A stretch of DNA of 63,816 nt, filler included, from Octopus bimaculoides (Eukaryota), in assembly GCF_001194135.2 (NCBI RefSeq). It is 5 parts of 4 records of this genome, joined end to end, with 100 filler letters (N's around TTAATTAATTAA, not from the genome) between each part and the next. Parts side by side here need not be neighbours in the genome. Positions count along the whole stretch, not along the records: positions 13,337 to 38,632 come from NC_068985.1; 4 more parts are not named here. One strand, 5' to 3'. The notes beneath the pieces are model-generated. The model was not told where the DNA came from, did no database searches, and saw only the letters and a program-made list of their open reading frames with translations. Of this stretch, positions 13,489 to 36,043 are shown piece after piece. Each line of letters starts with the position of its first letter. Position 1 is the first letter of the stretch. A program made the position numbers and the translations under genes.

Positions 13489-13545
<57 letters not shown>

Positions 13546-16298: not shown

Positions 16299-16331
16299 TC
16301 TAATTATAAACTTTTTATTTTCTCTTTGCAG
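16299..16331 (+). promoter_or_regulatory. Candidate 3' splice acceptor ahead of the long coding exon
   Basis: ctaat (branch-like), then ctttttattttctctttgcag; the AG at 16330-16331 overlaps the ORF's GTG. Confidence 0.7.
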
Positions 16332-19210
16332 TGACTGGAGTTGAAACCAAGCTGACATTACATGACAATTCACTTCTTTATTGCCTGCTTGCTACTATTT
16401 TCATATTACCTGGGGTCAAGTCTTACAATGCGACGTTGAACACTACAACATTTGTCGTTAATTCTAATTGTAACATATATTTCTCTGAACCGGAATTCGC
16501 TAAGGAATTCATGGTAATTTATGAACATGTAGAGTTGGTGAATATACGGGTAGATTTCCCATCTGAATTTGTCAATCCTTTGTTCGAAGTCAAAGATTAT
16601 TATAATCCAGAAGTTTGGTATTTATCAACGTACGAGCATGGTTTAACCCTACTGAAACTCCCGTTTCAGCATGCAATTTTCTCGTTATCCACTTTAGAAA
16701 GGAGCGTGAGGTATATTGATTTACGCCTCCGACACTCACCTCGACGCTGTCTGGAGAAACTGCCGTTTCATGAAAGGATGAATGTGGTTCGCAAATTTCA
16801 GTTTGATAATCTAAAGCAGGATAAGCAGCTGGGCTTCATATCTATTTGTAATCAGATAATAAAATCTAAGGAAGGGCATGCTGAATTTGTTAATTTCTGT
16901 TGTAAGAAAAATAACGCTGGTAAGATAGTATGTCACGAGGAAGATATAGGAATTTGGGTATCGCTACTGTTCTGGCTGCTTGCGGCTTTGCGACTGATTA
17001 TCTTATTATTCTCGCCACTACTACTTCCACAGAGCATGTACAATGCGGCATATGTCATGTCTGAATATACAGTTAAACTAAAATCTCCTTTTCTATTGAA
17101 CTTATTCGTGTCAACCAATGAAGACTGTATTGTTCGATACAAGAAACGCTTGGTCAAATCAGACATTAAATCTTGGAACAGATTTAACCATTTAATTCAA
17201 TATATACCACAGGAGACAGTTGTTCCAATACAAATTAATGAACTAAACGTCAAAGTTAAAGGAAAAAGAATAGTTGAAGGAAACTATCCACCATCCGGTC
17301 TAATGAAATCTTTATACGATAATTTCATTCGATGCAAAGTAAAAAACATAGAAACCTTTACAGAATGTTGTGAAAGTAGTATTTACGGAAAATGTGTGGA
17401 TCTGTTCATTAATTACAACATCACTTGGCATACATGCATGAAGACATTTATTAAATTGGTGATGTTGTTACTACTTCCATTGCCATATTATATCAGAGTA
17501 ATAATTTATTACATATTTGAAGAACCTGTGTTTGATTTTCGCCGTATGTTTGTTGCAGCAAACAGACTGGATGTATCATATAATTTCGTATCACAAACAT
17601 TTTTACAATACTTTTCTCCAACTCATCCTGTATTCATTACAACATATTTCTGTTATATCTTATCCGGTTTTATAATTGGCTTCGTTAATCCAAGCGGCAG
17701 AGAAATATTAAAAGGTGTCATACGAGGTTCTCTGCAAAATATGCGCGATGTAACTTATGTTGGAGGCGTAGAGATGATTACAAAACTTGCCTTGAACCCC
17801 TTTAAAACATTCGGTATCCTTGGTTTATTATTAGCCCCAATATATTGGCTGTTCGTTATACCATTAGGATGTGTATTGTTTCTTATATATAGCATTCCAA
17901 TAATTTACTTAATCACTGCAATATTTCGACACGCCATACGGGCTTTTCCGCTATTTGAAAAGAAAAGGCATCTTCTACCCAAACGAGCAACACGAAAGAT
18001 CAAAGAGTTAACCGAGTCGATGAAGGTAAAATTTAAAAATGATCTGTTTTATTATAAAGAAACAGAACCAACTCGATCAGAACAGGTCGTTAAGATAATA
18101 AAGCTATTTGCTGTAACTTCTTATTGCATAACTGTTCTCTTCTCTTTTACGCTCCTTGTAAGTGAATGTCTTGCATTTCTGTTACAAGTGGCAACATATA
18201 CAATGATGGGATTCATAGTAAACGCCTCTTCCCTTCTTAAATATGTAACTATGGCTCTTCTTGTTATTGTTTATATGCACGACTGTTATCAGGACGTATA
18301 TCAAAATTACGTAACGTTCACGAAAGAAATAATTGACGATTTAATGGACAGAGCAGAAAATATCAAAGAAGTCGCATCTCAGTCAGCTGATGTTCAGGAA
18401 AATGCTGCTTTCCAAGTTTCCCTGCCAACGGATGTTACACCGATTTCAACAAAATTTAACAACGATAAAGGAGAACCTAGATGGAACATCGGGCATTTAT
18501 CCGTTTTCTTAGACAAATACGATACTCCAAGAATGCCATTAAGATTATTTAAAGATATGTGCAACATAAGGACCTGGGGTTCACCAGGACCTGTTTATAT
18601 AAATTTGCTTATAGCGACGAGAAAGTTTCTTACAATAGTTGTTTTTCTTGCCTTTGTATTAGTGGTTGTACTAGCTTTTGGTAATGTCTACAGAGTTTCA
18701 TCAACAAACCAAACCTTAGCGGCAATGGCAGGGGGATTTGTTCCTCTGCTGCTAAAGAATGTCCTCTCCTCGCGTGTCTTAAAATTAAATTTAAAGACAT
18801 TAGCATTTAAGGGCCAGTTGGATGAGGTGTTATCTGCATATAGACAAAATTGGCCTATAAGTGATCTTGTTTTCGAATGGGGAGAAAATATTGTTCCAAG
18901 TGTACCAAACGAAAATGGTTTAAATGTTACCAATAGTAACAGCACTGATCTTCCAAATAAACTTGAAGAAACATTCACGAATTCTGATAACAATCCATTT
19001 CATAAAAAGGAATCATTTAAAACATCGTCAAATAGTAACGGATCAATAGACGACTTACATTACAACAGTGACGAGATCGATCTATTTATCGATCTCTCAT
19101 CGACGATAAATTCAGATACATGGCTAGAGACACCTCATCATTCAAATCCCGATTTGACTTTAAACCATATTCTTACTGTACCTCCACAATATTCTGTCAA
19201 ACATTTATAA
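16331..19210 (+). CDS. Uncharacterised multi-pass membrane protein (about 959 aa) with signal peptide and Cys-containing ectodomain; single large coding exon, 5' end uncertain
   Basis: 2.88-kb stop-free frame in AT-rich DNA. Hydrophobic signal (aa 14-31), sequons N33/N37, six Cys in aa 47-201, hydrophobic stretches at about 208-232, 373-396, 434-452, 494-532, 589-650, 766-784 and 796-811. No TE motifs. Confidence 0.9.
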   Translation: MTGVETKLTLHDNSLLYCLLATIFILPGVKSYNATLNTTTFVVNSNCNIYFSEPEFAKEFMVIYEHVELVNIRVDFPSEFVNPLFEVKDYYNPEVWYLSTYEHGLTLLKLPFQHAIFSLSTLERSVRYIDLRLRHSPRRCLEKLPFHERMNVVRKFQFDNLKQDKQLGFISICNQIIKSKEGHAEFVNFCCKKNNAGKIVCHEEDIGIWVSLLFWLLAALRLIILLFSPLLLPQSMYNAAYVMSEYTVKLKSPFLLNLFVSTNEDCIVRYKKRLVKSDIKSWNRFNHLIQYIPQETVVPIQINELNVKVKGKRIVEGNYPPSGLMKSLYDNFIRCKVKNIETFTECCESSIYGKCVDLFINYNITWHTCMKTFIKLVMLLLLPLPYYIRVIIYYIFEEPVFDFRRMFVAANRLDVSYNFVSQTFLQYFSPTHPVFITTYFCYILSGFIIGFVNPSGREILKGVIRGSLQNMRDVTYVGGVEMITKLALNPFKTFGILGLLLAPIYWLFVIPLGCVLFLIYSIPIIYLITAIFRHAIRAFPLFEKKRHLLPKRATRKIKELTESMKVKFKNDLFYYKETEPTRSEQVVKIIKLFAVTSYCITVLFSFTLLVSECLAFLLQVATYTMMGFIVNASSLLKYVTMALLVIVYMHDCYQDVYQNYVTFTKEIIDDLMDRAENIKEVASQSADVQENAAFQVSLPTDVTPISTKFNNDKGEPRWNIGHLSVFLDKYDTPRMPLRLFKDMCNIRTWGSPGPVYINLLIATRKFLTIVVFLAFVLVVVLAFGNVYRVSSTNQTLAAMAGGFVPLLLKNVLSSRVLKLNLKTLAFKGQLDEVLSAYRQNWPISDLVFEWGENIVPSVPNENGLNVTNSNSTDLPNKLEETFTNSDNNPFHKKESFKTSSNSNGSIDDLHYNSDEIDLFIDLSSTINSDTWLETPHHSNPDLTLNHILTVPPQYSVKHL

Positions 19211-19944: not shown

Positions 19945-20468
19945 AGGCGGACGTACAGGATGTGGACCGCAACCCCTTTCGTTTTTTTCTTTTACAGAAT
20001 CCCTCATTTTCGAGTACGGNNNNNNNNNNNNNNNNNNNNNNNNNNNNNNNNNNNNNNNNNNNNNNNNNNNNNNNNNNNNNNNNNNNNNNNNNNNNNNNNN
20101 NNNNNNNNNNNNNNNNNAAAAAAAAAAAAAAAAAGGCATTCTATAATTCTAATTTCCCTCCGCCCCCACCCAATTCTTCAATTTTCACTATTTTTTTAAA
20201 AATTGAAATTAAAAAAAAATTTTTTTTTCAGAATCATAATCTCGTATTTATTACGTATTTTGCAAAAAAAAAAAGGTAAAAAAAAAAATTCTGAAAAAAG
20301 TGAAAACTGAATTTTTTTTATGGGGTGTGTGTGTGTGAGGTAAATTGAAATTTTAAAATTCGTTTTTTTTTGGGGTGGATCAGAATCTCTGTACTCGAAA
20401 ATGGGGGATTCTATATAAAAAAAAAAAATACGAAAGAGGGTGTTGCCCACATTCCTTACGTCGGCTCC
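19945..20468. mobile_element. Diverged TIR element (MITE), gap in the middle
   Basis: Left ggcggacgtacaggatgtgg...agaatccctcattttcgagtac is imperfectly inverted to right gtactcgaaaatgggggattct...ccacattccttacgtcggctcc; no clean TSD. Confidence 0.5.
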
Positions 20469-20973
20469 TTAATGGATCCCCTTTAACTATATCTATGTAT
20501 GTTGGTGTTTATATTTTAAAAGCTCAAGTCGTTTACTTGTATATAAGTCTTTTTCTGTTATATAGCACATTAATATCTGTTCATGTGTATGAAAGTAGCA
20601 TTATGAATAAAAGCAACAAGCTACGGGAATGATAAAATATATCATATTTTGAAACTTGTGTGAGATTAAATTCAAAGAAAGCAACGAAACTTATTTTCAG
20701 TTTTATTTTATGTTAATTGGAAGAGGACGACAGAATCTGAAATCGCCTGAATAAAATATTAGCATCATTAACAAAGAACCTACTTCATGTAATATGCAAA
20801 GTATATCAATATATATATATTATTATAAGGCTTCGTGTTTGTAATACTTCAGTGAAGGCAAGGCAACTTTTAGGGCTTCAACACTAAGCGCTTTTCCGAA
20901 GATTTACTGTTAATTTAATACCATATATGGTCACACACACACACACACACACGCATGCACATATGTATGTATG

Positions 20974-21013
<40 letters not shown>

Positions 21014-21265
21014 NNNNNNNNNNNNNNNNNNNNNNNNNNNNNNNNNNNNNNNNNNNNNNNNNNNNNNNNNNNNNNNNNNNNNNNNNNNNNNNNNNNNNNN
21101 NNNNNNNNNNNNNNNNNNNNNNNNNNNNNNNNNNNNNNNNNNNNNNNNNNNNNNNNNNNNNNNNNNNNNNNNNNNNNNNNNNNNNNNNNNNNNACATGCA
21201 GACATATATTCTTAAATAAGAAAACTGTTGACAGTGACCTCGAAATATTGTTCAGTTGATTCATG

Positions 21266-21331
<66 letters not shown>

Positions 21332-21336
21332 AATAG

Positions 21337-21630
21337 CAGTACCAGGCAGTGGCTCTCATGGTTTCTGATCTTAATTGATTGGAAGTGTTATCATGTACAT
21401 TGTTTTGTCTTGGTATAAAAGATGGGCTACAGCAAATATTCTGCTGAATGCCACAGATTTGCTTGTCAGTTGTTTGACCTTAACCAGTTGAGCATTCCCT
21501 TGGTGGCTGACGATATGTGCCTCTCTGATCATGAGCAGAAGTAGTGGGGAGCATTATAGCGATGTGTTGAGTGCAATTCTTTGGGGTTTGAATAATGCAC
21601 CTTTGGAAACATGGATGTTTTGCTCAACCT
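21337..21630 (-). mobile_element. Retroposon 3' end with (TTA)n tail, unclassified
   Basis: Abuts the (AAT)n array at 21267-21335; weak GALFKPQRIALNT similarity to LINE C-termini. Confidence 0.45.
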
Positions 21631-21654
21631 CCTTAAAGTTGGATCTGACCCCCG

Positions 21655-21900
21655 GAAGGTTCACAGAGACAATTGATCATATTGTTTCTGACTGCCCAGT
21701 CCTCGCTGAAAAGGAATACCTCATTATAAAAATAAGATTACTGAATATTAATAATAACCAGATCAAGTTCGGTCACGTCATCATAAGAGGGCGAATACTC
21801 CAATGTGATAGACTCTCGCCGCTGCTATTCGTGGTTACCCTTATTTCTGTTACATTGATCTTGAAAGATACGAAATCATGTTACGAACGAGAAAATGACC
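21655..21900 (+). mobile_element. R4-like LINE fragments (CCHC region and RT region)
   Basis: ETIDHIVSDCPVLAEKEYL and IIRGRILQCDRLSPLLFVVTLI (compare GIFQGDSLSPLLF). Confidence 0.7.
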
Positions 21901-21931
21901 ACTTCCTGCTTCTATATAAATACGTGTATAT

Positions 21932-21976
21932 GCAGTCCGACGATGGCTTAACTGACCGAAACTTCGAAGTTACTGT
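21932..21976 (+). ncRNA. Minimal type I hammerhead-ribozyme-like motif
   Basis: GCAGT-CCGACGA-T-GG..CC-GAA-ACTTCGAAGT-T-ACTGT: 5-bp stem I, palindromic stem III, GUH triplet; U4 replaced by C. Confidence 0.55.
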
Positions 21977-22562
21977 CAACAATATTCTTCTTTAAGAATA
22001 AAGACATACACACACACATTCACTCACTCACACAGACACGCGCGCGCACACAAGTGTGTGTGTATTTGCGTGTACCTCACATTTAATTAATGGCAAACTG
22101 TATTCATTTCAATTATTTCATTTTATATACGAACAGTTTTTATTGAATATTTTTCAACAAAGTTATCCAGGCACAATAATATTCTTTGTTCCTATTTCGT
22201 AAACAAAACATAAAAATGAATGCATATTAATTTTTGAGGCTATCTTCAAAAATAATTTATAGAAGTATCGCGAATGAATCGTTCATATAGTCTTTATATT
22301 GTTAATTTTCAGTATTAAATGTATTTCATTATATCAGTAACCAGTCGTTATCATTTGTTTTTCTCGAAAAACGAGAAATGTCACTTCTATTCATGATTTA
22401 TTAAAACATTATTAATTAACAACAAATCTCTGAAATAGCCTAATCGTTAATTAATAGTAAGGATATAATATTGAATATGAGCGTCCTTTAAATCTGTAAC
22501 TTATTTCTAAGTTTCATTTTGATTCCAAAATGTATAGCTATCATTTATTTCCAAATTATTAA

Positions 22563-22880
22563 CAGGCACTCCGTCGGTTACGACGGCGAGGGTTCCATTT
22601 GAGTCGATCAACGGAACAGCATGCTCGTAAATTTAACGTGCAAGGAACAAAGCAATCCACAGGAATGCATAATCTTAATGCAATTCTAAGGGAAGTTAAC
22701 ACACAATGTGACAAGGCTGACATTTGAAATACAATTGCAACTCACTTTTGTCAGATGAGCGAACTGGAGCAACCCAAAATAAAGTGTCTTGGTCGAGGAC
22801 ACAACGCGCCGCTGGGAATCGAACTAATGATCTTACGATCGTCAGTCCAGTAGCCTAACTATTAAGCCACGTGCCTTCAG
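22563..22880 (-). mobile_element. SINE family D
   Basis: Reverse complement of the 11457 family, including tRNA-like head and CORE-like box. Confidence 0.75.
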
Positions 22881-22942
22881 CTTCACAACATTATTCGCAT
22901 CTTTGCCGACGTACTTAGATTGAGATTCATTTGCATTTTATA

Positions 22943-23154
22943 CAGGGTGTCCACAAAGTCTGGGTACATGGAATAAATAAAATCTTAACATAAACAATTA
23001 AATATAAGAAATGATAATTTCTTAAAGTAGGTGTTAATCCCCATGTGGGTACATGGAGTAAATGAAATCATAATATAAACAATTAGATATAGAAAATAAT
23101 AATTTCTTAGTGTATGTGTTAATCCCCATGTACCCAGACTTTGTGGACACCCTG
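22943..23154. mobile_element. Tc1/mariner-type MITE, 29-bp perfect TIRs, TA target duplication
   Basis: TA|cagggtgtccacaaagtctgggtacatgg...ccatgtacccagactttgtggacaccctg|TA. Confidence 0.92.
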
Positions 23155-23705
23155 TAGATTTCGCTGTCATAAATTTAAGACATTAACCCGAGCATTTGTG
23201 AGAGGTATTCAGACGATTCCAAGCACTGAAGGTGGGAAATTGAAGAGGAAGAGAATGACGTGGTGGTGAAGAATCTTGAGGAAAATTTTGAAGATACAGC
23301 AAGTTATATATATATGTGTGTATATATATAAATATATATATNNNNNNNNNNNNNNNNNNNNNNNNNNNNNNNNNNNNNNNNNNNNNNNNNNNNNNNNNNN
23401 NNNNNNNNNNNNNNNNNNNNNNNNNNNNNNNNNNNNNNNNNNNNNNNNNNNNNNNNNNNNNNNNNNNNNNNNNNNNNNNNNNNNNNNNNNNNNNNNNNNN
23501 NNNNNNNNNNNNNNNNNNNNNNNNNNNNNNNNNNNNNNNNNNNNNNNNNNNNNNNNNNNNNNNNNNNNNNNNNNNNNNNNNNNNNNNNNNNNNNNNNNNN
23601 NNNNNNNNNNNNNNNNNNNNNNNNNNNNNNNNNNNNNNNNNNNNNNNNNNNNNNNNNNNNNNNNNNNNNNNNNNNNNNNNNNNNNNNNNNNNNNNNNNNN
23701 NNNNN

Positions 23706-23762
<57 letters not shown>

Positions 23763-25589
23763 ATTCGCAAGCAGTCCGATTAAAAGAAATCTGACATTAA
23801 CTACAAACGTAAACATTGAAACCTGCCAATAAATATGAATATGTATATTTCTATAATTTTGCTTAGATGGATCCTAAGATTAATAGCTTCTCGCCAAAAG
23901 CTTCTGGATTTAATATATTACCGAACTTTGACATGGTAAGACAAAGAGACATAGGTATGAATGCAACCAACAAAACTGAGTAAGAGATGCACAATGAAAT
24001 GCGCGTTAGCGATTAGGCAGCTACCTTTTATATAAGTCGAAGAAAGTTTTCAGTTATTGATCACTTACAAAAATCACTTTTATCAGCCTTTCTTTCTTCT
24101 GCTGTAAAAGTAGATCCAGTTATACAGAACACATAAAATGCTACTCGAAAGATATAATTTTGGAATAGGGCAAAAAATGTATTGCCATGTGAATCGCGCG
24201 TTTACTCGTACAAAGAAAAATATATCGATTTGCAATAGAGAACGCACAGCTTCACAAAGCCATTCGTTTATATTTTGTCATCAAAACGTGTGACGCATAT
24301 TGAGAATTTTATATACGTGGTTAGATGCGAAATACACTACGCCTTTATTTAAAATGTAGGCACAGTTAAGTATAATGAGAAAACGTGAATTATAAATGTA
24401 CTGCTAAGGTTTTTAAAATGAAAGGTAATCATATTAAAAAGTAATCATATTAGAAGTTATAGTTTCATTTCTACATAATATTAGAACTTCGATTTGAATA
24501 GTGTTGATATATTTTCGATTATTTTAGATTGATAATATTTAATTAATAATTAGTCTTTATTGTTTATAATATCGTTAAAGGTTTTTTTTATTAAAACTTT
24601 GTATATATATATAAAGTTTAATCTTTTATTCTTAATAATTTTTTTCTTTCCTAATTTTTTCATTCATAATTTTTTCATTCATATTTTTATTCTTACGTTT
24701 GTAGAAATAAATATTCTTGCATTTTTCTATTATTCAATTGATTTTTAATGATAATTAAATAAACGTTTTTAGCTTTAAATAGTATAGCTTTAACTATTAC
24801 ACCGGTTAAATATGTACTAATTTTATCTTCATTATTATTTTAAACTTAAACTTCGTTCAAATTGTATTTAANNNNNNNNNNNNNNNNNNNNNNNNNNNNN
24901 NNNNNNNNNNNNNNNNNNNNNNNNNNNNNNNNNNNNNNNNNNNNNNNNNNNNNNNNNNNNNNNNNNNNNNNNNNNNNNNNNNNNNNNNNNNNNNNNNNNN
25001 NNNNNNNNNNNNNNNNNNNNNNNNNNNNNNNNNNNNNNNNNNNNNNNNNNNNNNNNNNNNNNNNNNNNNNNNNNNNNNNNNNNNNNNNNNNNNNNNNNNN
25101 NNNNNNNNNNNNNNNNNNNNNNNNNNNNNNNNNNNNNNNNNNNNNNNNNNNNNNNNNNNNNNNNNNNNNNNNNNNNNNNNNNNNNNNNNNNNNNNNNNNN
25201 NNNNNNNNNNNNNNNNNNNNNNNNNNNNNNNNNNNNNNNNNNNNNNNNNNNNNNNNNNNNNNNNNNNNNNNNNNNNNNNNNNNNNNNNNNNNNNNNNNNN
25301 NNNNNNNNNNNNNNNNNNNNNNNNNNNNNNNNNNNNNNNNNNNNNNNNNNNNNATATATATATATATATATAAATAATATTTCATATTACTGTATGATTG
25401 AATGCCACGCATCCATTTCCAAGTAAGTTTGTGTTGATAATTTTGATGCGACTCTACCCTGTACTGTTCTCTCTCTCTTCTTTCCTCTAATTCTTTTTTC
25501 TCTTCTTCTCCCCCTTTCGTTTTTTTCTCTCCTACTTTCTCTAATTCTTTTTCTCCCCTTCACCGTTTTCTATCTGTCTTTCTGTATGT

Positions 25590-26110
25590 CTGTCTGTCTC
25601 TCCCTCTTTCTCCTTTACTCTCTCTCATTGCTCAGGCGTGAACGTCGTCCATCTTTCATTTCTTCACGTGATCATCTTTCTTTTCGTTCAGTCTGTCGCA
25701 CAGATCAGACGCATCCTTATCAATCTTCTTGTCAAAGAATATTCCTCCAGCGTTCGCTAACTTACCTCGTCTGGTCTAACCACCTTCCATGTTTGTTTTC
25801 GTTTGGTTTGTTGTATGTATCCACTGTCCTGTTTTTGTTACCAACTTTGACCCTCCACAAATCCCACATTTTATTTTGGTTCACGGAAGCAACTGTTCTT
25901 CGAAACCTCATATTGTCGTTAATTTCTCGAAATGCGGAGTAGGTGAACAGCCGACAACTGATGAAGGGCCGTTCTTTATGTTACTTGTCTTGTTTCCCAT
26001 TTGTTTCTCTCGTTGTTCGCTTACTCAAGTTTGCCTTTGCATTTCACGTTGTGTTCGTATTTCGTAATTCGTGTTGTTTACGTTTTGTGACGTCCTATAC
26101 TTGAGTATAT
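25590..26110 (+). repeat. Unclassified dispersed repeat (partial copies at 26745-26880 and, reversed, near 26600)
   Basis: Shared ttgtttctctcgttgtt...gtgacgtcct(a/g)tac ending in a (TA)n tail. Confidence 0.55.
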
Positions 26111-27044
26111 ATAAAGGGCAGCAAAACTTTGCACATTTTACTACCAGTGGCCTAGCATGTAAAAAAAGTCAACAGACAACATATTCAATATAAAATACAA
26201 GACGAATTACCTTTTTTAACAAGCAATTTCTACACGCTAGAAGACCACAAAAAAGTTAAAACATTTTAAAGGGAAGAAAAAATAAAAACTTTTACCATAT
26301 TTCTAATGGCTAGACCTATAGGCCTATAGTAAAATTTTGTAAAGTTTTGTTACCCTTTATATATACTAAAGTATTTGATATTAGCATTTCAAAGTTCGTT
26401 TCGGCATTTTTCATTTACTGAAACTGCGCCTGCACAGTGGATTTTGAAAGAATTATAACATATATCTAGGAGACATGTGCGTATTGCCTTTTGTCTCATA
26501 GTTATACGTTAATCTTTGACTTTTGGTTACTGAAGAGAATTTGCCTAGTAAATTTTTTTTATTTACTAAAAAAATTCGAAACCTATAGTTTCAATACGCA
26601 AACAACGAGAAACAAATGGTAAACAACACAAGTAACACCAAAGCGACTCTATCATTTGTCGTCTGTCTATCTATACCTCATTTCAAGTATTGAACGACTA
26701 TATTACTCTTCGAAGACAGTTGCTTACATAAGTGCCAAAATAAAAGTTGGCGTTTATGGAAGGTTGTCCTATTGTCTATTTGTTTCTCTCGTTGTTTGAA
26801 TATCGAATTCATTTGTTTTCGTATTTCATGTTGTTTACTATTAGTGACGTCCTGTACCCTTATATGCATATATATATATATATANNNNNNNNNNNNNNNN
26901 NNNNNNNNNNNNNNNNNNNNNNNNNNNNNNNNNNNNNNNNNNNNNNNNNNNNNNNNNNNNNNNNNNNNNNNNNNNNNNNNNNNNNNNNNNNNNNNNNNNN
27001 NNNNNNNNNNNNNNNNNNNNNNNNNNNNNNNNNNNNNNNNNNNN

Positions 27045-27101
<57 letters not shown>

Positions 27102-27569
27102 CTGTATATATAATCGTATGAGCGGTCATGTTGCTGCAATTGTTAATTGTGCCATAACGATAAATGCAACGATTGCTATATATTACAACAGATGTCCCTC
27201 GAAATTACATTAGTCTCGAATTGAACTGCAACATGACAAAAGCAATTAACGTCCAGCATTAATTGTAAGCAATACGTTTGATATTTTATCGACTGGTGTA
27301 TTTACAGTGAAAATAGCATGGAGTATATTTGCTTTGTATTCTGTGTTGCGAGTAGGAATCGAATATATGCCATCTCCAGAGCCGTGTATCCCTACTATAG
27401 AGGCATTTTGTTGGAAAATACCAGAATAAATAACAGACTGACATTTCTTGAAAGAGTTATTGGAAAGCTGGCCAACGATAAACATAGAGATGAGTATTGG
27501 TTACAATTGTTAGTTTTAATTTATGGCTATATATCCTCAACAAAATACATATGCACACGAAACATTGTC

Positions 27570-27617
<48 letters not shown>

Positions 27618-28217
27618 NNNNNNNNNNNNNNNNNNNNNNNNNNNNNNNNNNNNNNNNNNNNNNNNNNNNNNNNNNNNNNNNNNNNNNNNNNNNNNNNNNN
27701 NNNNNNNNNNNNNNNNNNNNNNNNNNNNNNNNNNNNNNNNNNNNNNNNNNNNNNNNNNNNNNNNNNNNNNNNNNNNNNNNNNNNNNNNNNNNNNNNNNNN
27801 NNNNNNNNNNNNNNNNNNNNNNNNNNNNNNNNNNNNNNNNNNNNNNNNNNNNNNNNNNNNNNNNNNNNNNNNNNNNNNNNNNNNNNNNNNNNNNNNNNNN
27901 NNNNNNNNNNNNNNNNNNNNNNNNNNNNNNNNNNNNNNNNNNNNNNNNNNNNNNNNNNNNNNNNNNNNNNNNNNNNNNNNNNNNNNNNNNNNNNNNNNNN
28001 NNNNNNNNNNNNNNNNNNNNNNNNNNNNNNNNNNNNNNNNNNNNNNNNNNNNNNNNNNNNNNNNNNNNNNNNNNNNNNNNNNNNNNNNNNNNNNNNNNNN
28101 NNNNNNNNNNNNNNNNNNNNNNNNNNNNNNNNNNNNNNNNNNNNNNNNNNNNNNNNNNNNNNNNNNNNNNNNNNNNNNNNNNNNNNNNNNNNNNNNNNNN
28201 NNNNNNNNNNNNNNNNN

Positions 28218-28264
<47 letters not shown>

Positions 28265-28283
28265 ATACATATATATGTACAGT

Positions 28284-28325
<42 letters not shown>

Positions 28326-28707
28326 TAGATAGATAGATAGATAGAGAGATAGAGAGAGAGAGAGAGATAGAGAGATAGAGAGAGTTCCTCAGTCGGATTG
28401 AATGTCTTGCGATAATTACCGCGGATGTGCGTGATATGATTTCAAATCCTGCCGAGAAATCTGTAACGTTTCGACGTCGATAAATAATAGCCTCAAATTT
28501 TGGACAGAATCCAGCAATATTTTGTTGTTAGGGAACAGGAAACAATCAATTGTATCGATCTAGGAATGTTAGAATTTAGAATCAAATTCTCCGCAAAGTG
28601 AACTCAGTGACTAAGTAAACTGTAAGCACTGATAGGCATTGTGTGAGATGTGCTAATGTTTCTGCAAGATCGCGGTTTTACGGCGATAAATACTCAATCA
28701 ACCAAAA

Positions 28708-28848
28708 ATGGCGGACTTGTCGAAATTAAAACGGTTTTTGCTTCTGTTCTGTGCGTTTGGAGCTCAGTTAATACGTGTTTTACCCACTGGAGGAAAGGCC
28801 ATTCGATCGCAGCGAAAATTTACGTTACGTTTGGAAATTCTTTCGTGA
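28708..28848 (+). CDS. Possible 46-aa small ORF or first exon, signal-peptide-like
   Basis: aaaaATGGCGG start context; MADLSKLKRFLLLFCAFGAQLIRVLPTGGK...; CpG-rich region; no good splice donor found. Confidence 0.2.
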   Translation: MADLSKLKRFLLLFCAFGAQLIRVLPTGGKAIRSQRKFTLRLEILS

Positions 28849-29681
28849 ATTGGCCAAGTATTTCATTTCATCTTTGCTCTTGCCTTGCAGGAGAAAATAC
28901 TCGAGGACGTTCCTGCTCTACGTTTACAACAAACGGTATTATAAAAATTCTCGCCTACATGCGCATTAACCTCAGACACTCATGTTGGTCTGGGATTTGA
29001 TCTTTGACATAAAAGTAACAATGCACGAAAAAATTTCATCACGTTATACCTTATCATAAAAGCGTTAACTGATTGTAACGGAACATATTTGATACCAATA
29101 GCGATCGTTGAGATTACGTTGGTGAGGTGGCAGCATTGTTAGCATGCTGAGGGGTGGTGGAATTCTTAGTGGCATTCAGTCAGTCTTTTCGTTCTGAGTT
29201 CAAATCTCACTGAGGTCCAATTTGGTCGTTCATCCTTTTTGGTTCGATACACTAAGTACGAGTTGAGTGCTAGGTCTAGACTTCTTCTTTGAAATTGCTA
29301 TCCTTTTACTAAAATTTGAAACCACTAATTAGCGTTGGGATTTTGGAGATGGAACACACTCTGCTACTTTCTGGTAATTTAAGTGAGTTTTAGTCTTAGA
29401 CTTTCTTCATCAGGTTTAGTCATTAAGAAAATGAGTAATTGCGCTCGGTGTAAGATTAAATTTAATTTATTAATTTCACTTAAATTAATGCACATTCTTA
29501 CTGATTGATTTATACATGTAGCATATTTGGTTACTTAGGCATTTTACCCCNNNNNNNNNNCCCGCTGTTTTAAATGCTTGGATTTTAGCATATATTAGGT
29601 ACTTATCTGCTTTGAATACACATGTTCGTATACATATTGCACTAGCAAAATAGCGTTGGCACATACATACACATTATCACA

Positions 29682-29727
<46 letters not shown>

Positions 29728-31045
29728 TATACACATGTATATATTGAAACACACACAAATAAATAAGGTTATGTATACATACACTCAAATAATTAAGGTT
29801 ACTGAAATTCCAGCTCGCTAGAAATAGGAGTCAACACCCCAAAGCCACAAATCTCTCACTATAAGAAACCTCGCACGGTTAATAGAGCAAATAAAACAAA
29901 AATAGGACTTACCTTTGCAAAAACTAGATACAAAGTAAAAAGATAGATATCTTGGTATCAATTGATTTCATCTTTTAGGATCATCAGCCAAGCTTACTGT
30001 ATACAACTAGTTTTCAAAATATATTNNNNNNNNNNNNNNNNNNNNNNNNNNNNNNNNNNNNNNNNNNNNNNNNNNNNNNNNNNNNNNNNNNNNNNNNNNN
30101 NNNNNNNNNNNNNNNNNNNNNNNNNNNNNNNNNNNNNNNNNNNNNNNNNNNNNNNNNNNNNNNNNNNNNNNNNNNNNNNNNNNNNNNNNNNNNNNNNNNN
30201 NNNNNNNNNNNNNNNNNNNNNNNNNNNNNNNNNNNNNNNNNNNNNNNNNNNNNNNNNNNNNNNNNNNNNNNNNNNNNNNNNNNNNNNNNNNNNNNNNNNN
30301 NNNNNNNNNNNNNNNNNNNNNNNNNNNNNNNNNNNNNNNNNNNNNNNNNNNNNNNNNNNNNNNNNNNNNNNNNNNNNNNNNNNNNNNNNNNNNNNNNNNN
30401 NNNNNNNNNNNNNNNNNNNNNNNNNNNNNNNNNNNNNNNNNNNNNNNNNNNNNNNNNNNNNNNNNNNNNNNNNNNNNNNNNNNNNNNNNNNNNNNNNNNN
30501 NNNNNNNNNNNNNNNNNNNNNNNNNNNNNNNNNNNNNNNNNNNNNNNNNNNNNNNNNNNNNNNNNNNNNNNNNNNNNNNNNNNNNNNNNNNNNNNNNNNN
30601 NNNNNNNNNNNNNNNNNNNNNNNNNNNNNNNNNNNNNNNNNNNNNNNNNNNNNNNNNNNNNNNNNNNNNNNNNNNNNNNNNNNNNNNNNNNNNNNNNNNN
30701 NNNNNNNNNNNNNNNNNNNNNNNNNNNNNNNNNNNNNNNNNNNNNNNNNNNNNNNNNNNNNNNNNNNNNNNNNNNNNNNNNNNNNNNNNNNNNNNNNNNN
30801 NNNNNNNNNNNNNNNNNNNNNNNNNNNNNNNNNNNNNNNNNNNNNNNNNNNNNNNNNNNNNNNNNNNNNNNNNNNNNNNNNNNNNNNNNNNNNNNNNNNN
30901 GAATAAACAAACAAGCAAAAAAGCTATATATATATATAACTACTCCCCCCCCCAAAGAAGAACAAACACAACAAGAAAAAACAACAACGTGAGGACGTGG
31001 TACATACAAAGTATTAACAGACTCTCAGGGAAGGAAGGAAATGTG

Positions 31046-31080
31046 GTTTTACGTTTCGAGCAAAGCTGTTCATCAGGAAC
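31046..31080 (-). ncRNA. Minimal hammerhead-ribozyme-like motif, degraded, inside a repeat (about 30985-31140)
   Basis: Minus strand GTTC-CTGATGA-A-CAGC-TTT-GCTC-GAA-ACGT-A-AAAC; intact core, one mismatch each in stems I and II. Confidence 0.55.
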
Positions 31081-31137
31081 AGGAGACAGAGTAAAGGAAG
31101 ATGGAGGAAAAAATCTCCGACGATCCACATGTGATTA

Positions 31138-31239
<102 letters not shown>

Positions 31240-31464
31240 GAGAAAGATATATATATATTTAGGGGATAAAAAAGCACTCAAATATTGTAGACTCTGCCAA
31301 GAAACAACTGTGAGCTAAAATAGTTCGTGTAATAATTTCATGTTCCCTTGTTTATTTAAATTGATTTCATTGCTTTGTACAGTCCACTGACGCTTTGTTC
31401 TGAAGCATATGTATATTGAATTATAACACCAGATTATTATGCCTAAGAGACCTATCTATCTATG

Positions 31465-31552
<88 letters not shown>

Positions 31553-31561
31553 AATTGTTGT

Positions 31562-32035
31562 GTGTGATATATTTAACCCCTCCGCAATCTTTCGTAAAGT
31601 TATATGAGAATCAGCATCAATTATGGCTTTGATTCGGCCATCATCAACTTCAGTAGGTCAACCAGAACGTTGGTCATATTTGAGTGGAAAATCTCCAGAA
31701 CGGAATTTCTAAAACAATTTCTGACACGTATGTTCTGTTGTTAAGCAATCAACACCATAAATTTCACATACCTCTTTGTGAGCCTCAGCAGCTTTCTTGC
31801 CTTTATGTAAATTAAAAAGAAAAATATGGCGAAACTTTTCGTTTTTGTACTCCATGTTAAAACTGACACTGAATTAACAGCTATATAAAAAAAAAAATAG
31901 GCGCAATTTGCTTCTAGTGTAAGCTAAAAGTAACGGCTATCAAATGTCAAAAGGAAAATATCATAACATCGACAAAAGTCATTCAAAAACAACGTAACTC
32001 AGTATTTCTTCTAGGCGTTAGCCATTATTTCTCAT
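31562..32035 (-). mobile_element. Mariner transposon 5' fragment (HTH domains)
   Basis: ATG at 31855: MEYKNEKFRHIFLFNLHKGKKAAEAHKEVCEIYG...KFRSGDF...RSG*PTEVDDGRIKAIIDADSHITLRKIAEGLNISH. Confidence 0.85.
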
Positions 32036-32959
32036 ATTTGACCGAAGGGCCGTATTTATTCCGTCTTCGTCAATCGTTTCACATTACAGTCGTTTACTTT
32101 CGTACGGCCACTTTGCATCGTTTTGTTTGTTCGAGCCTTAATTCTCTGCAAATTTTGCGGGTGCCGCCGATATGCGAAGTACTCAGTCTTATCATTAAAG
32201 ACCTGAAACTGTGTATTGGTATTCTATCTATTTGCGAAAAACGAAATTACTTTCTTGTCAGCCCGACGTGTATGTGTATGTGTGTGTGTGTGTACGCGTT
32301 TCTTTGTGTTTGTGCCTGTACCACGCCAACACATGACAACTAGTGTTGGTTTGTCTACGTCCACATAAATCCATCCCTTCCGTAAAAGAGATCGACAGAA
32401 TAAGCACCAAAATTAGAAAAAAATAGTACAAGGGGTTGATTTGTTGGAGTAAACTCTTCTCAGCCTGGTAGCTATCCAATGAATGAAACAAATAAAAGAT
32501 AAAGAACAAAACATGACCAAAATGTTATTATTTGAAAACTAGGCCATCTACTTTACGCATGTATCTGACCAGTTCTATACAGGCAAGAGGGAAACGAGCT
32601 GTAATAGCCATAGGCATAAGAGCGTTGCAAAACTTTCCCTGAAAAGAATTAAATCTGATATCTTCCTATATTTAGATGAATACAATCCACTCCACGCCCC
32701 CTTTTAGATATTTCGTTTTAGTTTTCTGACTGTTACTATATTTTACATTATGGTTTCTTTACTGTTTATTTCTGGGTTTTTTTTTTTCATTTTCTTTGTT
32801 AGTATTTTTATATGTATGAAAACTGATTATCTTAATATTTAGTGAATAGTGAATTGACGTTTCGGTTAATTTATACAAGTTTTCAATCTGTCAATACTAT
32901 TTTTTTATCGACATTATAACTTCTCACCGTCAATGACATAGTTCAAAATCCAGTTGTAT

Positions 32960-33300
32960 TAGTTCGTCCGTCGTTGTCGACGATAACCAAGGCATCGCAT
33001 GGCAGAGGAAGATGGCGTCCAGCTGTGGCCGACCAGTCTCATGCGTGCTCAGAAGTCTGTGTCGCCGGTGGTCTGAAGGTAAGGAGTTGACTCTAGACTA
33101 GCGCAGTTTATGTTTTCTGTGTGCTCCTGCAGCCCTGTTCTGTTCGGAAGAGGTGGAACTTCTACTGATCCCCCATCACCAGGCAGAATGGTTTTATGCT
33201 TGCCTTTCACAGATGTCAGACTTGATCTCAAAGCTCTTTAATTGTAGAATCCCTTGTTGTCTGCGACATACCTGAACAATCTGGGAAGGTATCAGATTTC
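32960..33300 (-). mobile_element. RTE/BovB-like LINE 3' end, decayed
   Basis: Across frames: CERQA*NHSAW*WGI...EQNRAAGAHRKHK and DF*ARMRLVGHSW (compare FRARIGLVGHLR). Confidence 0.65.
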
Positions 33301-34371
33301 AATTCTTTTCGTGGTCAGATGAACAATTCCTCGAAGCTTACTGGTATTACAGCTCCCTTCCCCCGTGCCTATGTCGTACTGGTCAGATACATGCTTAAAA
33401 TAAATGACCTGGTTTACAAACAGTGCCATTTTGGTCAAATTCTTTTCGTTTGTCAGTCAATTTATTGTGGATCTGAAGAATATAAATGCTTTGGATTGTT
33501 CTCTTTTCTTAGTCTTCTTTTAATCGATAGACTGTGAATCGATTACTTAATAAGATTGAACTATGAAACCCCTCCAAATTTTATTGGAAACATATGTAAG
33601 CATTCAGCATTATCTGTGTGTATTTTCTAAATTACCTTGAAGCAACATACTAATTTCCCTTGATAACCATAGCGCGGATTAACAAATTTGATTGATGACA
33701 GCTTGTTGAATTCGTATTACCAGAATTCTCACTACTAACACAGGACATACTTGTTAGCCTGGTGTATTTTCCTGTACAGAGAGCTTACGAAGTATTTCCT
33801 CTAGATTATTAATTCTTTTTATTTTGATGTGTGTGTGTGTGTGTGTGTGTATGTGTGTGTGTGTGTGTATGTGCGATGAGTTTCGAAAAGTACATATTCG
33901 CCTAAATGTGCGGACTCTGATCTATCACAAGAACATGCTACTGTATACGTGGTTGCGTCTAGTAATTCCTAATCCGAATTTAAATACCTTTTGACGCTTT
34001 TTATAACGTTCAATGGTACTTCTTAGATTTCAAATCGGAATGATTTTCAATAAAGCAGCTGCACAATGTATGCCTAAATCTATTTAGATAATGTTTGTTA
34101 ATATTAGTTTTTTCCGTTCAGTAATTTCTGTAAATTTAGTGTTCTTTAACATTTCAATATTATCCATCATTGTTCTCGTAATTGCATACGATGCTTCCAC
34201 TCTCTAAAAAGATTCTCGGTCCAGTTTTATTTATTGTTATTATCTGATTCTTCCTCGATAGGCATCTCATATATCTCATCTGATATAGATCAAACATTCC
34301 TATTGTTGAAAGTTCCAGTTCATAATTGAGTCGGTGTTAGCTAGGAATTGTCTCTCATAGTGGGTTTGTGT

Positions 34372-34504
34372 GGCGCAGGAGTGGCTGTGTGGTAAGTAAC
34401 TTGCTTACCAACCACATGGTTCCAGGTTCAGTCCCACTGCGCAGTACATTGGACAAGTGTCTTCTTCTATAGCCTCGGGTCGACCGAAGCCTTGTGAGTG
34501 AATT
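34372..34504 (+). mobile_element. SINE family A 5' part (cut by gap)
   Basis: ggcgcaggagtggctgtgtggtaagtaacttgcttaccaaccacatggttccaggttcagtccc. Confidence 0.85.
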
Positions 34505-35139
34505 NNNNNNNNNNNNNNNNNNNNNNNNNNNNNNNNNNNNNNNNNNNNNNNNNNNNNNNNNNNNNNNNNNNNNNNNNNNNNNNNNNNNNNNNNNNNNNNN
34601 NNNNNNNNNNNNNNNNNNNNNNNNNNNNNNNNNNNNNNNNNNNNNNNNNNNNNNNNNNNNNNNNNNNNNNNNNNNNNNNNNNNNNNNNNNNNNNNNNNNN
34701 NNNNNNNNNNNNNNNNNNNNNNNNNNNNNNNNNNNNNNNNNNNNNNNNNNNNNNNNNNNNNNNNNNNNNNNNNNNNNNNNNNNNNNNNNNNNNNNNNNNN
34801 NNNNNNNNNNNNNNNNNNNNNNNNNNNNNNNNNNNNNNNNNNNNNNNNNNNNNNNNNNNNNNNNNNNNNNNNNNNNNNNNNNNNNNNNNNNNNNNNNNNN
34901 NNNNNNNNNNNNNNNNNNNNNNNNNNNNNNNNNNNNNNNNNNNNNNNNNNNNNNNNNNNNNNNNNNNNNNNNNNNNNNNNNNNNNNNNNNNNNNNNNNNN
35001 NNNNNNNNNNNNNNNNNNNNNNNNNNNNNNNNNNNNNNNNNNNNNNNNNNNNNNNNNNNNNNNNNNNNNNNNNNNNNNNNNNNNNNNNNNNNNTCCCCAC
35101 AGGAAAAAAAAAAAGAAACAAATACTGCGAGGAATATCA

Positions 35140-35790: not shown

Positions 35791-36043
35791 AAACTGAGCC
35801 ACTTATCAAAATATATCTTCAATAAAATGAATAATTTAGAGTTGTAATAATGTCTTGTGAAAGTGGAACATAAATGGAACAATCTCGAATATAAAATGCG
35901 TGTTTTGTTAGTCTGAATTCGTTGTATGTCTATCAATGGATAAATGAACGCTGTGTCGAGCGGTACACAACATGGGAAGGTCAAGAATGTGAGAGGGATG
36001 TAGGAGAGAGAGAGAGAGAGAGAGAGATTTCAGAAAATTAAAT

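What the first reader, a model, noticed from the sequence alone, without database searches (positions are those of the whole stretch)
16331..19210. Intact 959-aa orphan-looking polytopic membrane protein with a disulfide-type ectodomain, encoded in one exon
Seen: the only long intact host-like ORF in 64 kb. Signal peptide; ectodomain of about 175 aa with sequons N33/N37 and Cys at 47, 140, 173, 190, 191 and 201; one TM, then a 140-aa Cys-containing loop; about 7 further hydrophobic segments; basic patch (aa 533-568); a late hairpin KFLTIVVFLAFVLVVVLAFG...TLAAMAGGFVPLLL; S/N/D-rich tail. I recognise no GPCR, Cys-loop, DEG/ENaC, TRP or transporter motif. Inference: a receptor, channel or transporter of an uncharacterised invertebrate family. 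The short AMAGGFVP segment could be a re-entrant loop. This is the best candidate here for an undescribed system, for example a sensory or immune receptor.
Basis: partly seen in the sequence, partly recalled or inferred. Interest (0 to 1): 0.75.

Follow-up and report, generated by a model that had tools for sequence, protein, structure and literature searches.

The report
Uncharacterised DUF8415 membrane protein gene of octopus
The long reading frame is real: it holds 959 of the 964 codons of an annotated Octopus bimaculoides gene for a many-pass membrane glycoprotein, which belongs to a large family (Pfam DUF8415) seen so far only in molluscs and annelids and with no known function.

Summary
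The ORF at 16331-19210 (+) exists as described. It runs 966 stop-free codons; shuffled sequence gave at most 213. It is not a complete gene, though. It has no ATG of its own and follows a splice acceptor (AG at 16330-16331). The RefSeq protein LOC106884358 (964 aa) takes its first five codons from a mini-exon about 31.8 kb upstream, outside this piece.

It is not an orphan. An exhaustive HMMER search found 484 clusters of relatives (217 below 1e-30), and the protein already carries Pfam PF28478 (DUF8415). All 11 relatives that carry an organism name, plus the octopus protein, come from molluscs or annelids. Relatives usually have an intronless coding sequence, and some paralogues appear to be clustered. 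Close relatives show dN/dS of about 0.06-0.07.

No relation to a characterised family was found in Pfam (51 members scanned), NCBIfam, PDB sequences or the literature. Both AlphaFold runs failed (pLDDT 35 and 43, five-sequence alignments), so no fold comparison was possible.

Sequence statistics favour a topology with the N-terminus outside, about 9 transmembrane segments, and the C-terminus inside. The most conserved parts are the membrane core, which has buried R/E/N and Gly/Pro motifs, and the cytoplasmic domains. I tentatively infer a transporter- or channel-like machine. The sensory or immune receptor idea is untested.

The parts
16310..16331 (+). 3' splice site of intron 1: a polypyrimidine tract followed by AG at 16330-16331. 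The ORF's apparent GTG start is the intron's last G plus the exon's TG.
   Evidence: Sequence read. The exon 1 donor and the split codon G|TG were reconstructed from the chromosome locus L001. P0001 = MLRQL + ORF.
16332..19210 (+). Large terminal coding exon of LOC106884358. It carries codons 6 (last two bases) to 964 plus the TAA stop at 19208-19210.
   Evidence: exact match to L001 41807-44686. The open frame is far beyond chance.
16373..16423 (+). Signal-peptide-like hydrophobic stretch (residues 20-36, LLYCLLATIFILPGVKS).
   Evidence: Hydropathy. Relatives have classical N-terminal signal peptides, but these align to a different place. Cleavage is inferred, not tested.
16424..16942 (+). 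Extracellular/luminal ectodomain (residues 37-209). It has six family-conserved Cys (52, 145, 178, 195, 196, 206) and N-glycosylation sequons at N38 and N42.
   Evidence: Cys are conserved in 84-97% of 114 members. This is the only region with sequon enrichment, 1.74x. No Pfam or PDB-sequence relative was found.
16949..17023 (+). TM1 (residues 212-236).
   Evidence: Family-averaged hydropathy peak of 2.23.
17039..17443 (+). Cytoplasmic loop 1 (residues 242-376). It is basic and carries the conserved PVGL..LY....RCKIR.......CC motif.
   Evidence: Net charge about +10 per sequence and no sequon enrichment. C340/C351/C352 are conserved in 93-95%. It is 64-70% identical to the closest relatives.
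17444..17938 (+). TM2-TM5 block (residues 377-541). Conserved residues include R394 within TM2, E402 just after TM2, P435/H437 before TM3, and P495, G500, P516 and P528 in and around the TM4-TM5 hairpin.
17939..18094 (+). Variable basic cytoplasmic loop (residues 542-593).
   Evidence: Low conservation (0.7-1.05 bits) and K/R excess. Only 31-38% identical to the closest relatives.
18095..18283 (+). TM6-TM7 block (residues 594-656), with E617, G632, N636 and Y653. The family motif is EC.GF.VE..VYTLMGIIVNA...LKY.
   Evidence: E617 94%, G632 99%, N636 89%, Y653 99%.
18284..18598 (+). Conserved soluble domain (residues 657-761), inferred to be cytoplasmic. It ends in the invariant G.PGP motif (P757/G758).
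   Evidence: No sequon enrichment. 78-80% identical to the closest relatives. P757 100%, G758 98%.
18599..18766 (+). Terminal helical hairpin: TM8 (762-791), polar tip Y.vSSTNQ (792-799), and TM9 or re-entrant arm LA.MAGGFVP (800-817). It is the most conserved block of the protein.
   Evidence: 2.6-2.75 bits per column. S795, N798, Q799, G807 and P810 are 81-100% conserved. 86-91% identical to the closest relatives.
18767..18895 (+). Conserved juxtamembrane C-terminal segment (residues 818-860) with F831, W846 and D850.
18896..19207 (+). Poorly conserved acidic S/N/D-rich tail (residues 861-964). It contains one conserved short motif, D(L/I)FI(D/E)L, at about residues 920-926.
   Evidence: 21-28% identity. 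Net charge about -9 per sequence.

Best explanation
SHOWN. Window 16332-19210 (+) is the large terminal coding exon of Octopus bimaculoides gene LOC106884358. It holds 959 of 964 codons. The ATG and four more codons sit in a mini-exon about 31.8 kb upstream. The product belongs to Pfam DUF8415 (PF28478). This is a large family of 880-1100-aa polytopic membrane proteins under purifying selection. Every member examined that carries an organism name comes from a mollusc or an annelid. Relatives usually have an intronless coding sequence, and some genomes hold several paralogues.

INFERRED FROM SEQUENCE STATISTICS. The topology has the N-terminus outside and the C-terminus inside, in this order:
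- a signal peptide;
- a glycosylated ectodomain of about 170 aa, probably beta-rich, with three presumed disulfides;
- TM1;
- a basic cytoplasmic domain of 135 aa with a juxtamembrane CC pair;
- TM2 to TM7;
- a conserved cytoplasmic domain of about 100 aa;
- a highly conserved TM8 / SSTNQ tip / GG..P hairpin;
- a conserved juxtamembrane segment;
- a disordered acidic tail.

TENTATIVE MECHANISM (inference only, my estimate about 0.3). The strongest constraint is on the membrane core. That core has near-invariant charged or polar residues inside or at the edge of TM segments (R394, E617, N636, the SSTNQ tip; E402 just after TM2) and helix-breaking Pro/Gly motifs. I therefore think the protein works within the membrane as a solute- or ion-conducting (transporter- or channel-like) or lipid-handling machine. 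The faster-evolving ectodomain would act as a ligand-binding or regulatory module, and the conserved cytoplasmic domains would couple to intracellular partners.
For: Identity and gene model: a 100% match to the RefSeq protein, with PF28478 attached. The family name DUF8415 and a gene span of 34.9 kb come. The exon 1 sequence, its donor and the exact position of exon 2 come, and the acceptor.

Real and constrained: 966 open codons against at most 213 in shuffles. dN/dS is 0.06-0.07 among the closest relatives, and dS against octopus is saturated at dN 0.40. One relative sits on a 3.3-kb contig that ends in an A run, as an mRNA would.

Family size and range: 484 clusters at E<=1e-3 and 217 at <=1e-30. 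The named members are Octopus, Candidula, Liolophura (two), Mizuhopecten, Pinctada, Argopecten, Owenia (two) and Capitella.

Intronless coding sequence in relatives: P0004 spans 2961 bp on a 214-kb contig, and Owenia P0005 spans 2655 bp in its genome.

Clustered paralogues: the clusters of P0015, P0016 and P0039 list the same four contig lengths.

Topology: sequons are enriched only in residues 37-209 (1.74x). Loop 1 has net charge +10. Residues 657-758 and the tail show no enrichment. K/R residues flank the cytoplasmic ends of the TM8/TM9 hairpin, and the tip is uncharged.

Constraint centred on the membrane core: conservation by block, near-invariant residues, and regional identities (ectodomain 38-40%, TM8-9 86-91%, cytoplasmic domain 78-80%).
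Against: Nothing bears on the mechanism directly. There is no usable 3D model: pLDDT was 35 and 43. I found no detectable homology to any transporter, channel, enzyme or receptor family. No internal or inverted repeat of the kind many transporters have was found.

The number of crossings in residues 594-656 is ambiguous. If it is two TMs, the total is 9 and the C-terminus is inside. If it is three, everything after it flips.

The octopus N-terminus is unusual. Its n-region is 19 residues long, and its hydrophobic stretch does not align with the signal peptides of the relatives. The Gnomon-type 5' exon has not been checked against RNA reads here, and no expression data for the octopus gene were available.

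The mollusc-and-annelid range rests on 11 named relatives among the 34 relatives' clusters whose names or sources I saw. The weaker 334 hits were not listed.
Confidence: 0.55

Rival explanations
1. It is a cell-surface receptor, sensory or immune. The variable glycosylated ectodomain binds ligands, and the polytopic core with its conserved cytoplasmic domains transduces the signal without conducting anything.
For: The ectodomain evolves fastest among the folded parts (38-40% against 55-91% identity). It carries variable sequons. The family has several copies per genome and apparently clustered paralogues. The coding sequence is intronless, as in many chemoreceptor families. The cytoplasmic domains are strongly conserved and could dock partners.
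Against: No signalling domain (kinase, TIR, death, G-protein-coupling 7TM) was detected in 51 members. The ectodomain is small, and its conserved core residues are shared across the whole family. The near-invariant intramembrane R/E/N and Gly/Pro motifs are not needed for a mere anchor. No expression data place it in sensory or immune tissue.
Confidence: 0.2
2. It is an intramembrane enzyme or a trafficking/biogenesis factor of the secretory pathway, for example a lipid- or glycan-modifying enzyme, a scramblase or a cargo receptor. It would be analogous in layout to the TM9SF, SPPL2 or GOLD-7TM proteins.
For: The layout is a signal peptide, a luminal domain of about 170 aa and about nine TM segments with the N-terminus outside and the C-terminus inside. 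From memory, TM9SF and SPPL2 share that layout. Conserved E402, H437, an Asp at alignment position 475 (Asn in octopus) and D850 could be catalytic. The acidic tail has a conserved short motif that could be a sorting signal.
Against: No match to EMP70, Peptidase_A22B or any enzyme family appeared in Pfam for 51 members at E<=1. The YD/GxGD/PAL protease motifs are absent from the TM segments. No conserved His/Asp constellation stands out in the membrane.
Confidence: 0.2
3. It is a decaying or mis-annotated locus. The ORF lost its own start codon and is no longer a functional gene in O. bimaculoides.
For: There is no in-frame ATG before Met-66 of the 964-aa protein. Relatives start inside the big exon with their own signal peptide. 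No transcript assembly containing this exact protein was seen; its sources are annotation databases only.
Against: A 2.9-kb frame stays open in 35% GC DNA. All family-invariant residues are kept. A strong acceptor sits at the exon start, and a matching donor with an in-frame ATG lies upstream. A hydrophobic signal-like stretch is retained.
Confidence: 0.04
4. It is a gene of viral or mobile-element origin, for example an envelope-like membrane glycoprotein, that spread among lophotrochozoans.
For: The coding sequence is intronless, the family is multi-copy, and its range is restricted to one lineage.
Against: No relative was found in the IMG/VR viral contigs. No LTR or TIR-type repeats flank the ORF; only microsatellites are present. 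The gene has a spliced 5' exon and strong purifying selection. The family spans molluscs and annelids, which fits vertical descent.
Confidence: 0.03

Closest known systems
Pfam PF28478 (DUF8415), a family of unknown function
   Same: This exact protein and all the relatives returned by the search for homologous proteins carry the precomputed PF28478 hit. Homology runs full length to hundreds of members.
   Different: Nothing differs; it is a member. The family has no described function, structure or literature. The octopus copy differs from its relatives in taking its start codon from an upstream mini-exon.
TM9SF / nonaspanin (EMP70) proteins (recalled from memory as an architectural analogue)
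   Same: A signal peptide, an N-terminal luminal beta-rich domain, then about nine TM segments with a cytoplasmic C-terminus.
   Different: No EMP70 Pfam match in 51 members. DUF8415 has large conserved cytoplasmic inserts (135 aa after TM1, about 100 aa before TM8) and a long tail.
SPPL2-type signal peptide peptidases (recalled from memory)
   Same: A glycosylated ectodomain of about 170 aa followed by 9 TM segments with the N-terminus outside and the C-terminus inside, and a conserved Pro-containing motif in the last TM.
   Different: There are no YD, GxGD or PAL motifs in the membrane segments and no Peptidase_A22B match. The protein is about twice as long.
OSCA/TMEM63-TMEM16-TMC superfamily channels and scramblases (recalled from memory)
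   Same: A polytopic core with a large cytoplasmic domain inserted between early TM segments, and conserved charged residues lining the membrane helices.
   Different: No RSN1_7TM, Anoctamin or TMC Pfam match. The position of the insert and the presence of a signal peptide and ectodomain both differ. No structural comparison was possible.

Membership tests
Pfam DUF8415 (PF28478) | Match to the PF28478 profile | tested here: met
   A precomputed Pfam hit PF28478.1 is listed for P0001 (100% identical to the window ORF) and for P0002-P0005. One search names it DUF8415. The local Pfam copy predates the model, so my own hmmscan could not reproduce the hit.
Pfam DUF8415 (PF28478) | Full-length homology to other members, sharing the conserved Cys pattern and TM-core motifs | tested here: met
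   phmmer: 484 clusters, many aligned across residues about 50-860. Invariant or near-invariant columns appear in the 52- and 114-sequence alignments.
GPCR / 7TM receptors | Seven TM helices and a match to a 7tm profile | tested here: not met
   Nine or ten hydrophobic segments. No 7tm Pfam hit in 51 members at E<=1.
Cys-loop, DEG/ENaC, TRP/polycystin channels | Match to Neur_chan_LBD/memb, ASC, Ion_trans or PKD_channel/PLAT profiles | tested here: not met
   No hits. One member of 51 gave Neur_chan_memb at E=0.088, which is noise. No PDB-sequence match.
TM9SF / nonaspanin | Match to the EMP70 profile | tested here: not met
   No hit in 51 members.
TM9SF / nonaspanin | Signal peptide, luminal N-domain and nine TM segments | tested here: inconclusive
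   The layout is compatible according to hydropathy, sequon and charge statistics. The TM count across residues 594-656 is ambiguous, and there is no structure.
Signal peptide peptidase (SPP/SPPL) | Catalytic YD and GxGD motifs in TM6/TM7 and a PAL motif in TM9 | tested here: not met
   A regex search of P0001 found no GxGD and no PAL. The only YD dipeptides (334, 735) lie in soluble regions.
Transporters with internal or inverted structural repeats | Detectable internal sequence repeat between the two TM halves | tested here: not met
   hhalign of the 114-sequence profile against itself gave a best off-diagonal probability of 0.9%. Repeats visible only in a structure cannot be excluded.
Any family with a solved structure | Fold similarity | not testable with these tools
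   Only five sequences could be given to AlphaFold. Mean pLDDT was 35 and 43, too low for a meaningful Foldseek search.

The most novel reading that the evidence does not exclude
DUF8415 could be a new class of membrane machine restricted to lophotrochozoans, either a ligand-regulated channel or transporter or a new receptor type. Its fold would be unrelated to any characterised superfamily. It would have diversified by tandem duplication in molluscs and annelids, and the octopus would keep one divergent copy.
Probability: 0.25. Interest if true: 0.7.

Novelty: already known. Interest (0 to 1): 0.35.

Why it matters
This is a 'known unknown'. The gene and its family are already in RefSeq, UniRef and Pfam, so the window adds no new entity. 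The family is still large (484 clusters at 50% identity), strongly constrained, apparently confined to molluscs and annelids, and without any detectable link to a characterised channel, transporter, receptor or enzyme. Families of this kind are where lineage-specific physiology may be hiding. It would be a reasonable target for structure prediction with a deep alignment, followed by expression and electrophysiology. The practical lesson for the scan is that an 'orphan-looking' long ORF in an animal genome should first be checked against protein databases, and should be checked for a splice acceptor at its apparent start.

Tried and rejected
1. Two further homologous-protein searches with profiles returned only the same four proteins, because the candidate cap was swamped. 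The alignment allowed for structure prediction therefore stayed at five sequences.
2. AlphaFold on the full length (pLDDT 35) and on the TM core, residues 370-860 (pLDDT 43), were both unusable. I ran no fold search, because matches to such models are meaningless.
3. Profile searches against PDB sequences gave only noise. These were the full-length profile (best hit MsbA TM helices at E=0.019, then phospholamban) and the ectodomain alone (best E=1.2).
4. Pfam on 51 members at E<=1, Pfam on eight long members to look for extra domains, and NCBIfam showed no consistent family.
5. hhalign self-comparison for internal repeats found none.
6. Mean-field DCA on 177 sequences (Neff 139) gave top couplings that form cliques typical of phylogenetic or gap artefacts, not helix-helix ladders. 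I discarded the result.
7. The viral-origin check in IMG/VR found no relative.
8. Literature searches found no papers. The terms were PF28478, DUF8415, LOC106884358, six homologue accessions and three sample accessions. A search on spiralian-specific gene families returned nothing relevant.
9. A search for exon 1 inside the piece found nothing. It lies beyond a 4.2-kb assembly gap upstream.
10. A search for paralogous fragments in the piece and its chromosome flanks found only the one copy.
Full report
OBSERVATION. The piece (13337-38632) contains one outstanding reading frame, 16331..19210 on the + strand, listed as 959 aa from GTG. Its translation has no internal stop. The stop-free run is 966 codons. 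In 200 shuffles of the non-N bases (34.7% GC) the longest run averaged 117 codons and never exceeded 213. The analytic probability of 959 open codons is about 4e-31. The other ORFs of 150 aa or more overlap each other on both strands and run across runs of N (assembly gaps) or microsatellites. These are sequons at N38/N42; Cys at 52, 145, 178, 195, 196 and 206; a strong TM at 210-241; a loop of about 135 aa with Cys at 271, 340, 351, 352, 360 and 374; further hydrophobic segments at 377-401, 438-458, 496-541, 590-656, 759-797 and 800-817; the basic stretch; and the S/N/D-rich tail.

The frame has no ATG before Met-61 of the ORF (Met-66 of the 964-aa protein), which lies beyond the signal-like stretch. 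The bases just upstream are a canonical 3' splice site, ttttattttctctttgcAG, with the AG at 16330-16331. The 'GTG start' is therefore the intron's last G plus the first two exon bases. The database protein, RefSeq 'uncharacterized protein LOC106884358 isoform X1' of Octopus bimaculoides (964 aa), equals MLRQL plus this ORF. In the chromosome-level assembly (GCA_001194135.2, CM046605.1) the gene spans 34.9 kb. Exon 1 reads ATGCTGCGTCAATTAG|GTAAAC, and its last G completes the split Val codon. The large exon follows about 31.8 kb downstream, after several gaps, one of which (4.2 kb) ends exactly where this piece begins. Exon 1 is accordingly not in the window. So 959 of 964 codons are in one exon, but the start codon is not.

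NOT AN ORPHAN. The word-indexed search found four close relatives (56-58% identity, unnamed, from ENA and Logan assemblies) and an Owenia fusiformis protein (30%). All carry the precomputed Pfam hit PF28478.1, which names DUF8415. My local Pfam copy is older and gives no hit. The exhaustive HMMER search over 1.84 billion cluster representatives found 484 clusters at E<=1e-3, 378 at <=1e-10 and 217 at <=1e-30. Most of the best 150 are 880-1100 aa and align across residues about 50-860. I looked up 30 of these clusters; together with the four unnamed close relatives, I saw names or sources for 34 relatives' clusters. Every relative that carries an organism name is a mollusc or an annelid: Candidula, Liolophura (two genes), Mizuhopecten, Pinctada, Argopecten, Owenia (two genes) and Capitella. 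All are called 'uncharacterized', 'hypothetical' or 'unnamed protein product'. The clusters of P0015, P0016 and P0039 list the same four contig lengths. That indicates three paralogues on one contig in each of four assemblies, an inference made from contig lengths only. No paper mentions the Pfam accession, the DUF name, the locus or six homologue accessions.

GENE STRUCTURE IN RELATIVES. P0004 occupies exactly 2961 bp (986 codons plus stop) on a 214-kb genomic contig. Owenia P0005 occupies exactly 2655 bp in its genome assembly. Both therefore have an intronless coding sequence with their own ATG. Many other full-length members were called as single ORFs on contigs of 0.2 to 3 Mb. About 45 nt upstream of the P0004 ATG there is a polypyrimidine-CAG that looks like an acceptor. 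A 5'-UTR intron may therefore be ancestral in this clade, with the octopus start codon having moved into the upstream exon; this is inference. In the five-sequence alignment, the N-terminal signal peptides of the relatives have no counterpart in the octopus exon. The octopus hydrophobic stretch (residues 20-33) aligns with their linker region instead.

SELECTION AND EXPRESSION. By Nei-Gojobori counts, P0004 against P0002 and against P0003 gives dN 0.17-0.20, dS about 2.7-2.9 and dN/dS of 0.06-0.07. Against the octopus gene dS is saturated, with dN 0.40. The P0002 contig is 3.3 kb long, has 174 and 146 nt of flank, and ends in an A run, as an mRNA would. That cluster has 24 member sequences from run assemblies. 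No expression data for the octopus gene itself were available.

NO LINK TO A CHARACTERISED FAMILY.
- Pfam: nothing for the octopus protein at E<=1, nothing consistent in 51 members at E<=1 (26 families, no more than 2 members each), and no accessory domains in eight long members.
- NCBIfam: nothing.
- PDB sequences: only noise with the single protein, the 52-sequence profile (best hit MsbA TM helices at E=0.019) and an ectodomain-only profile.
- Internal repeats: none by profile self-comparison.
- Viral contigs: no relative in IMG/VR.
- Structure: only the five proteins returned by the search for homologous proteins could be used. Both AlphaFold jobs gave unusable models, with mean pLDDT 35 for the full length and 43 for residues 370-860. 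No fold comparison was attempted.
- Coevolution: a DCA attempt (Neff 139) gave only artefactual cliques.

ANATOMY AND TOPOLOGY (INFERRED). Family-averaged hydropathy reproduces the segments seen in the octopus protein. Across 114 full-length members, N-glycosylation sequons exceed the compositional expectation only in the N-terminal domain, residues 37-209 (2.46 observed against 1.42 expected, 1.74x). Loop 242-376 carries a net charge of about +10 and shows no enrichment. Residues 657-758 and the tail show none either. K/R residues flank both cytoplasmic ends of the last two hydrophobic segments, and the tip (Y.vSSTNQ) is uncharged.

The simplest model has the N-terminus outside and the C-terminus inside, with about nine crossings, in this order:
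- signal peptide;
- ectodomain with six conserved Cys;
- TM1;
- basic cytoplasmic domain with the motif PVGL..LY....RCKIR.......CC;
- TM2 (LP.PWYIR, R394 97%; E402 98% just after it);
- short outer loop (P435 98%, H437 88%);
- TM3;
- inner loop;
- TM4/TM5 hairpin (P495, G500, P516, P528);
- variable basic inner loop;
- TM6/TM7 (EC.GF.VE..VYTLMGIIVNA...LKY; E617 94%, G632 99%, N636 89%, Y653 99%);
- conserved inner domain ending in G.PGP (P757 100%);
- TM8, SSTNQ tip, TM9 (LATLAGGFLP; G807 96%, P810 100%);
- conserved juxtamembrane segment (W846, D850);
- acidic disordered tail with one conserved D(L/I)FI(D/E)L-like motif.

The number of crossings within residues 594-656 is uncertain. Whether 800-817 fully crosses the membrane or re-enters it cannot be told.

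WHERE THE CONSTRAINT LIES. Identity between the octopus protein and its three closest relatives, by region, is as follows:
- ectodomain, 38-40%;
- TM1, 56-59%;
- loop 1, 64-70%;
- TM2-5, 54-61%;
- variable loop, 31-38%;
- TM6-7, 59-62%;
- inner domain, 78-80%;
- TM8-9, 86-91%;
- juxtamembrane segment, 72-77%;
- tail, 21-28%.

Family-wide conservation peaks at 2.6-2.75 bits per column in TM8-9. The conserved business end is therefore in and under the membrane, and it includes buried charged or polar residues and Gly/Pro kinks. The ectodomain diverges faster.

MECHANISM. Shown: a real, constrained gene for a polytopic glycoprotein of family DUF8415. Inferred: the topology given above. My best guess, held at about 0.3, is that the protein works within the membrane as a transporter- or channel-like or lipid-handling core, regulated through the ectodomain and coupled to cytoplasmic partners. 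Pseudogene or mis-annotation (about 0.04) and viral or mobile-element origin (about 0.03) are unlikely. The evidence available here does not decide between the first three.

COMPARISON WITH KNOWN FAMILIES, AND NOVELTY. The protein is a member of Pfam DUF8415. The layouts of TM9SF, SPPL2 and OSCA/TMEM63 are recalled analogues only. Their defining profiles or motifs were tested and not met. The gene, the protein and the family are already catalogued, so I rate novelty as 'already known', in the sense of known as an unknown. The open question is what DUF8415 does. A deep-alignment structure prediction with a fold search, RNA-seq at the locus and heterologous expression are the decisive steps.

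Noticed in passing
window 29139-29223, 37364-37448, 37595-37679, 37847-37931, 38064-38148: Five copies of an interspersed repeat about 170 nt long. Four of them lie within 0.8 kb at roughly 230-bp spacing. They share a conserved core, GCGTTCTGAGTTCAAATTCCGCCGAGGTCGAC, that resembles a tRNA B-box/T-arm, so this is probably a tRNA-derived SINE of the octopus genome. ARAGORN and Rfam call nothing there.
   Followed up: partly
window 20020-37877 (11 runs of N, 10-875 nt long) and L001 34564-38812: The piece is a draft-assembly scaffold full of gaps. Most of the other 'ORFs' and the 'inverted repeats' of 200-526 nt reported by the tools are artefacts of N runs. The piece starts right after a 4.2-kb gap inside intron 1 of the gene.
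   Followed up: yes
window 22961-23131: An 85-bp unit repeated twice in tandem at 87% identity, AT-rich and of unknown meaning. Many microsatellites surround the gene: (AC)n at 13492, (TCTA)n at 15141 and 31452, (ATA)n at 21267, and (GA)n at 28284 and 31142.
   Followed up: no
L002 about 9950-10000 (relative P0004) compared with window 16310-16331: The closest genomic relative has its own ATG inside the big exon. About 45 nt upstream of that ATG there is also a polypyrimidine-CAG, so a 5' intron may be shared. The octopus appears to have lost the in-exon ATG and the relatives' signal peptide, and to use a different hydrophobic stretch.
   Followed up: partly
P0001 residues 535/538 and 624 (window about 17918-17929 and 18185-18187): The octopus and its close relatives have Ala where 86% of the family has Arg in TM5; they have an Arg three residues later instead. 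They also have Gln where the family consensus has a second Glu in the EC.GF.VE motif. These are lineage-specific changes at otherwise conserved intramembrane charges.
   Followed up: no
This suggests tandem or clustered duplication in some unnamed ENA genomes.
   Followed up: no
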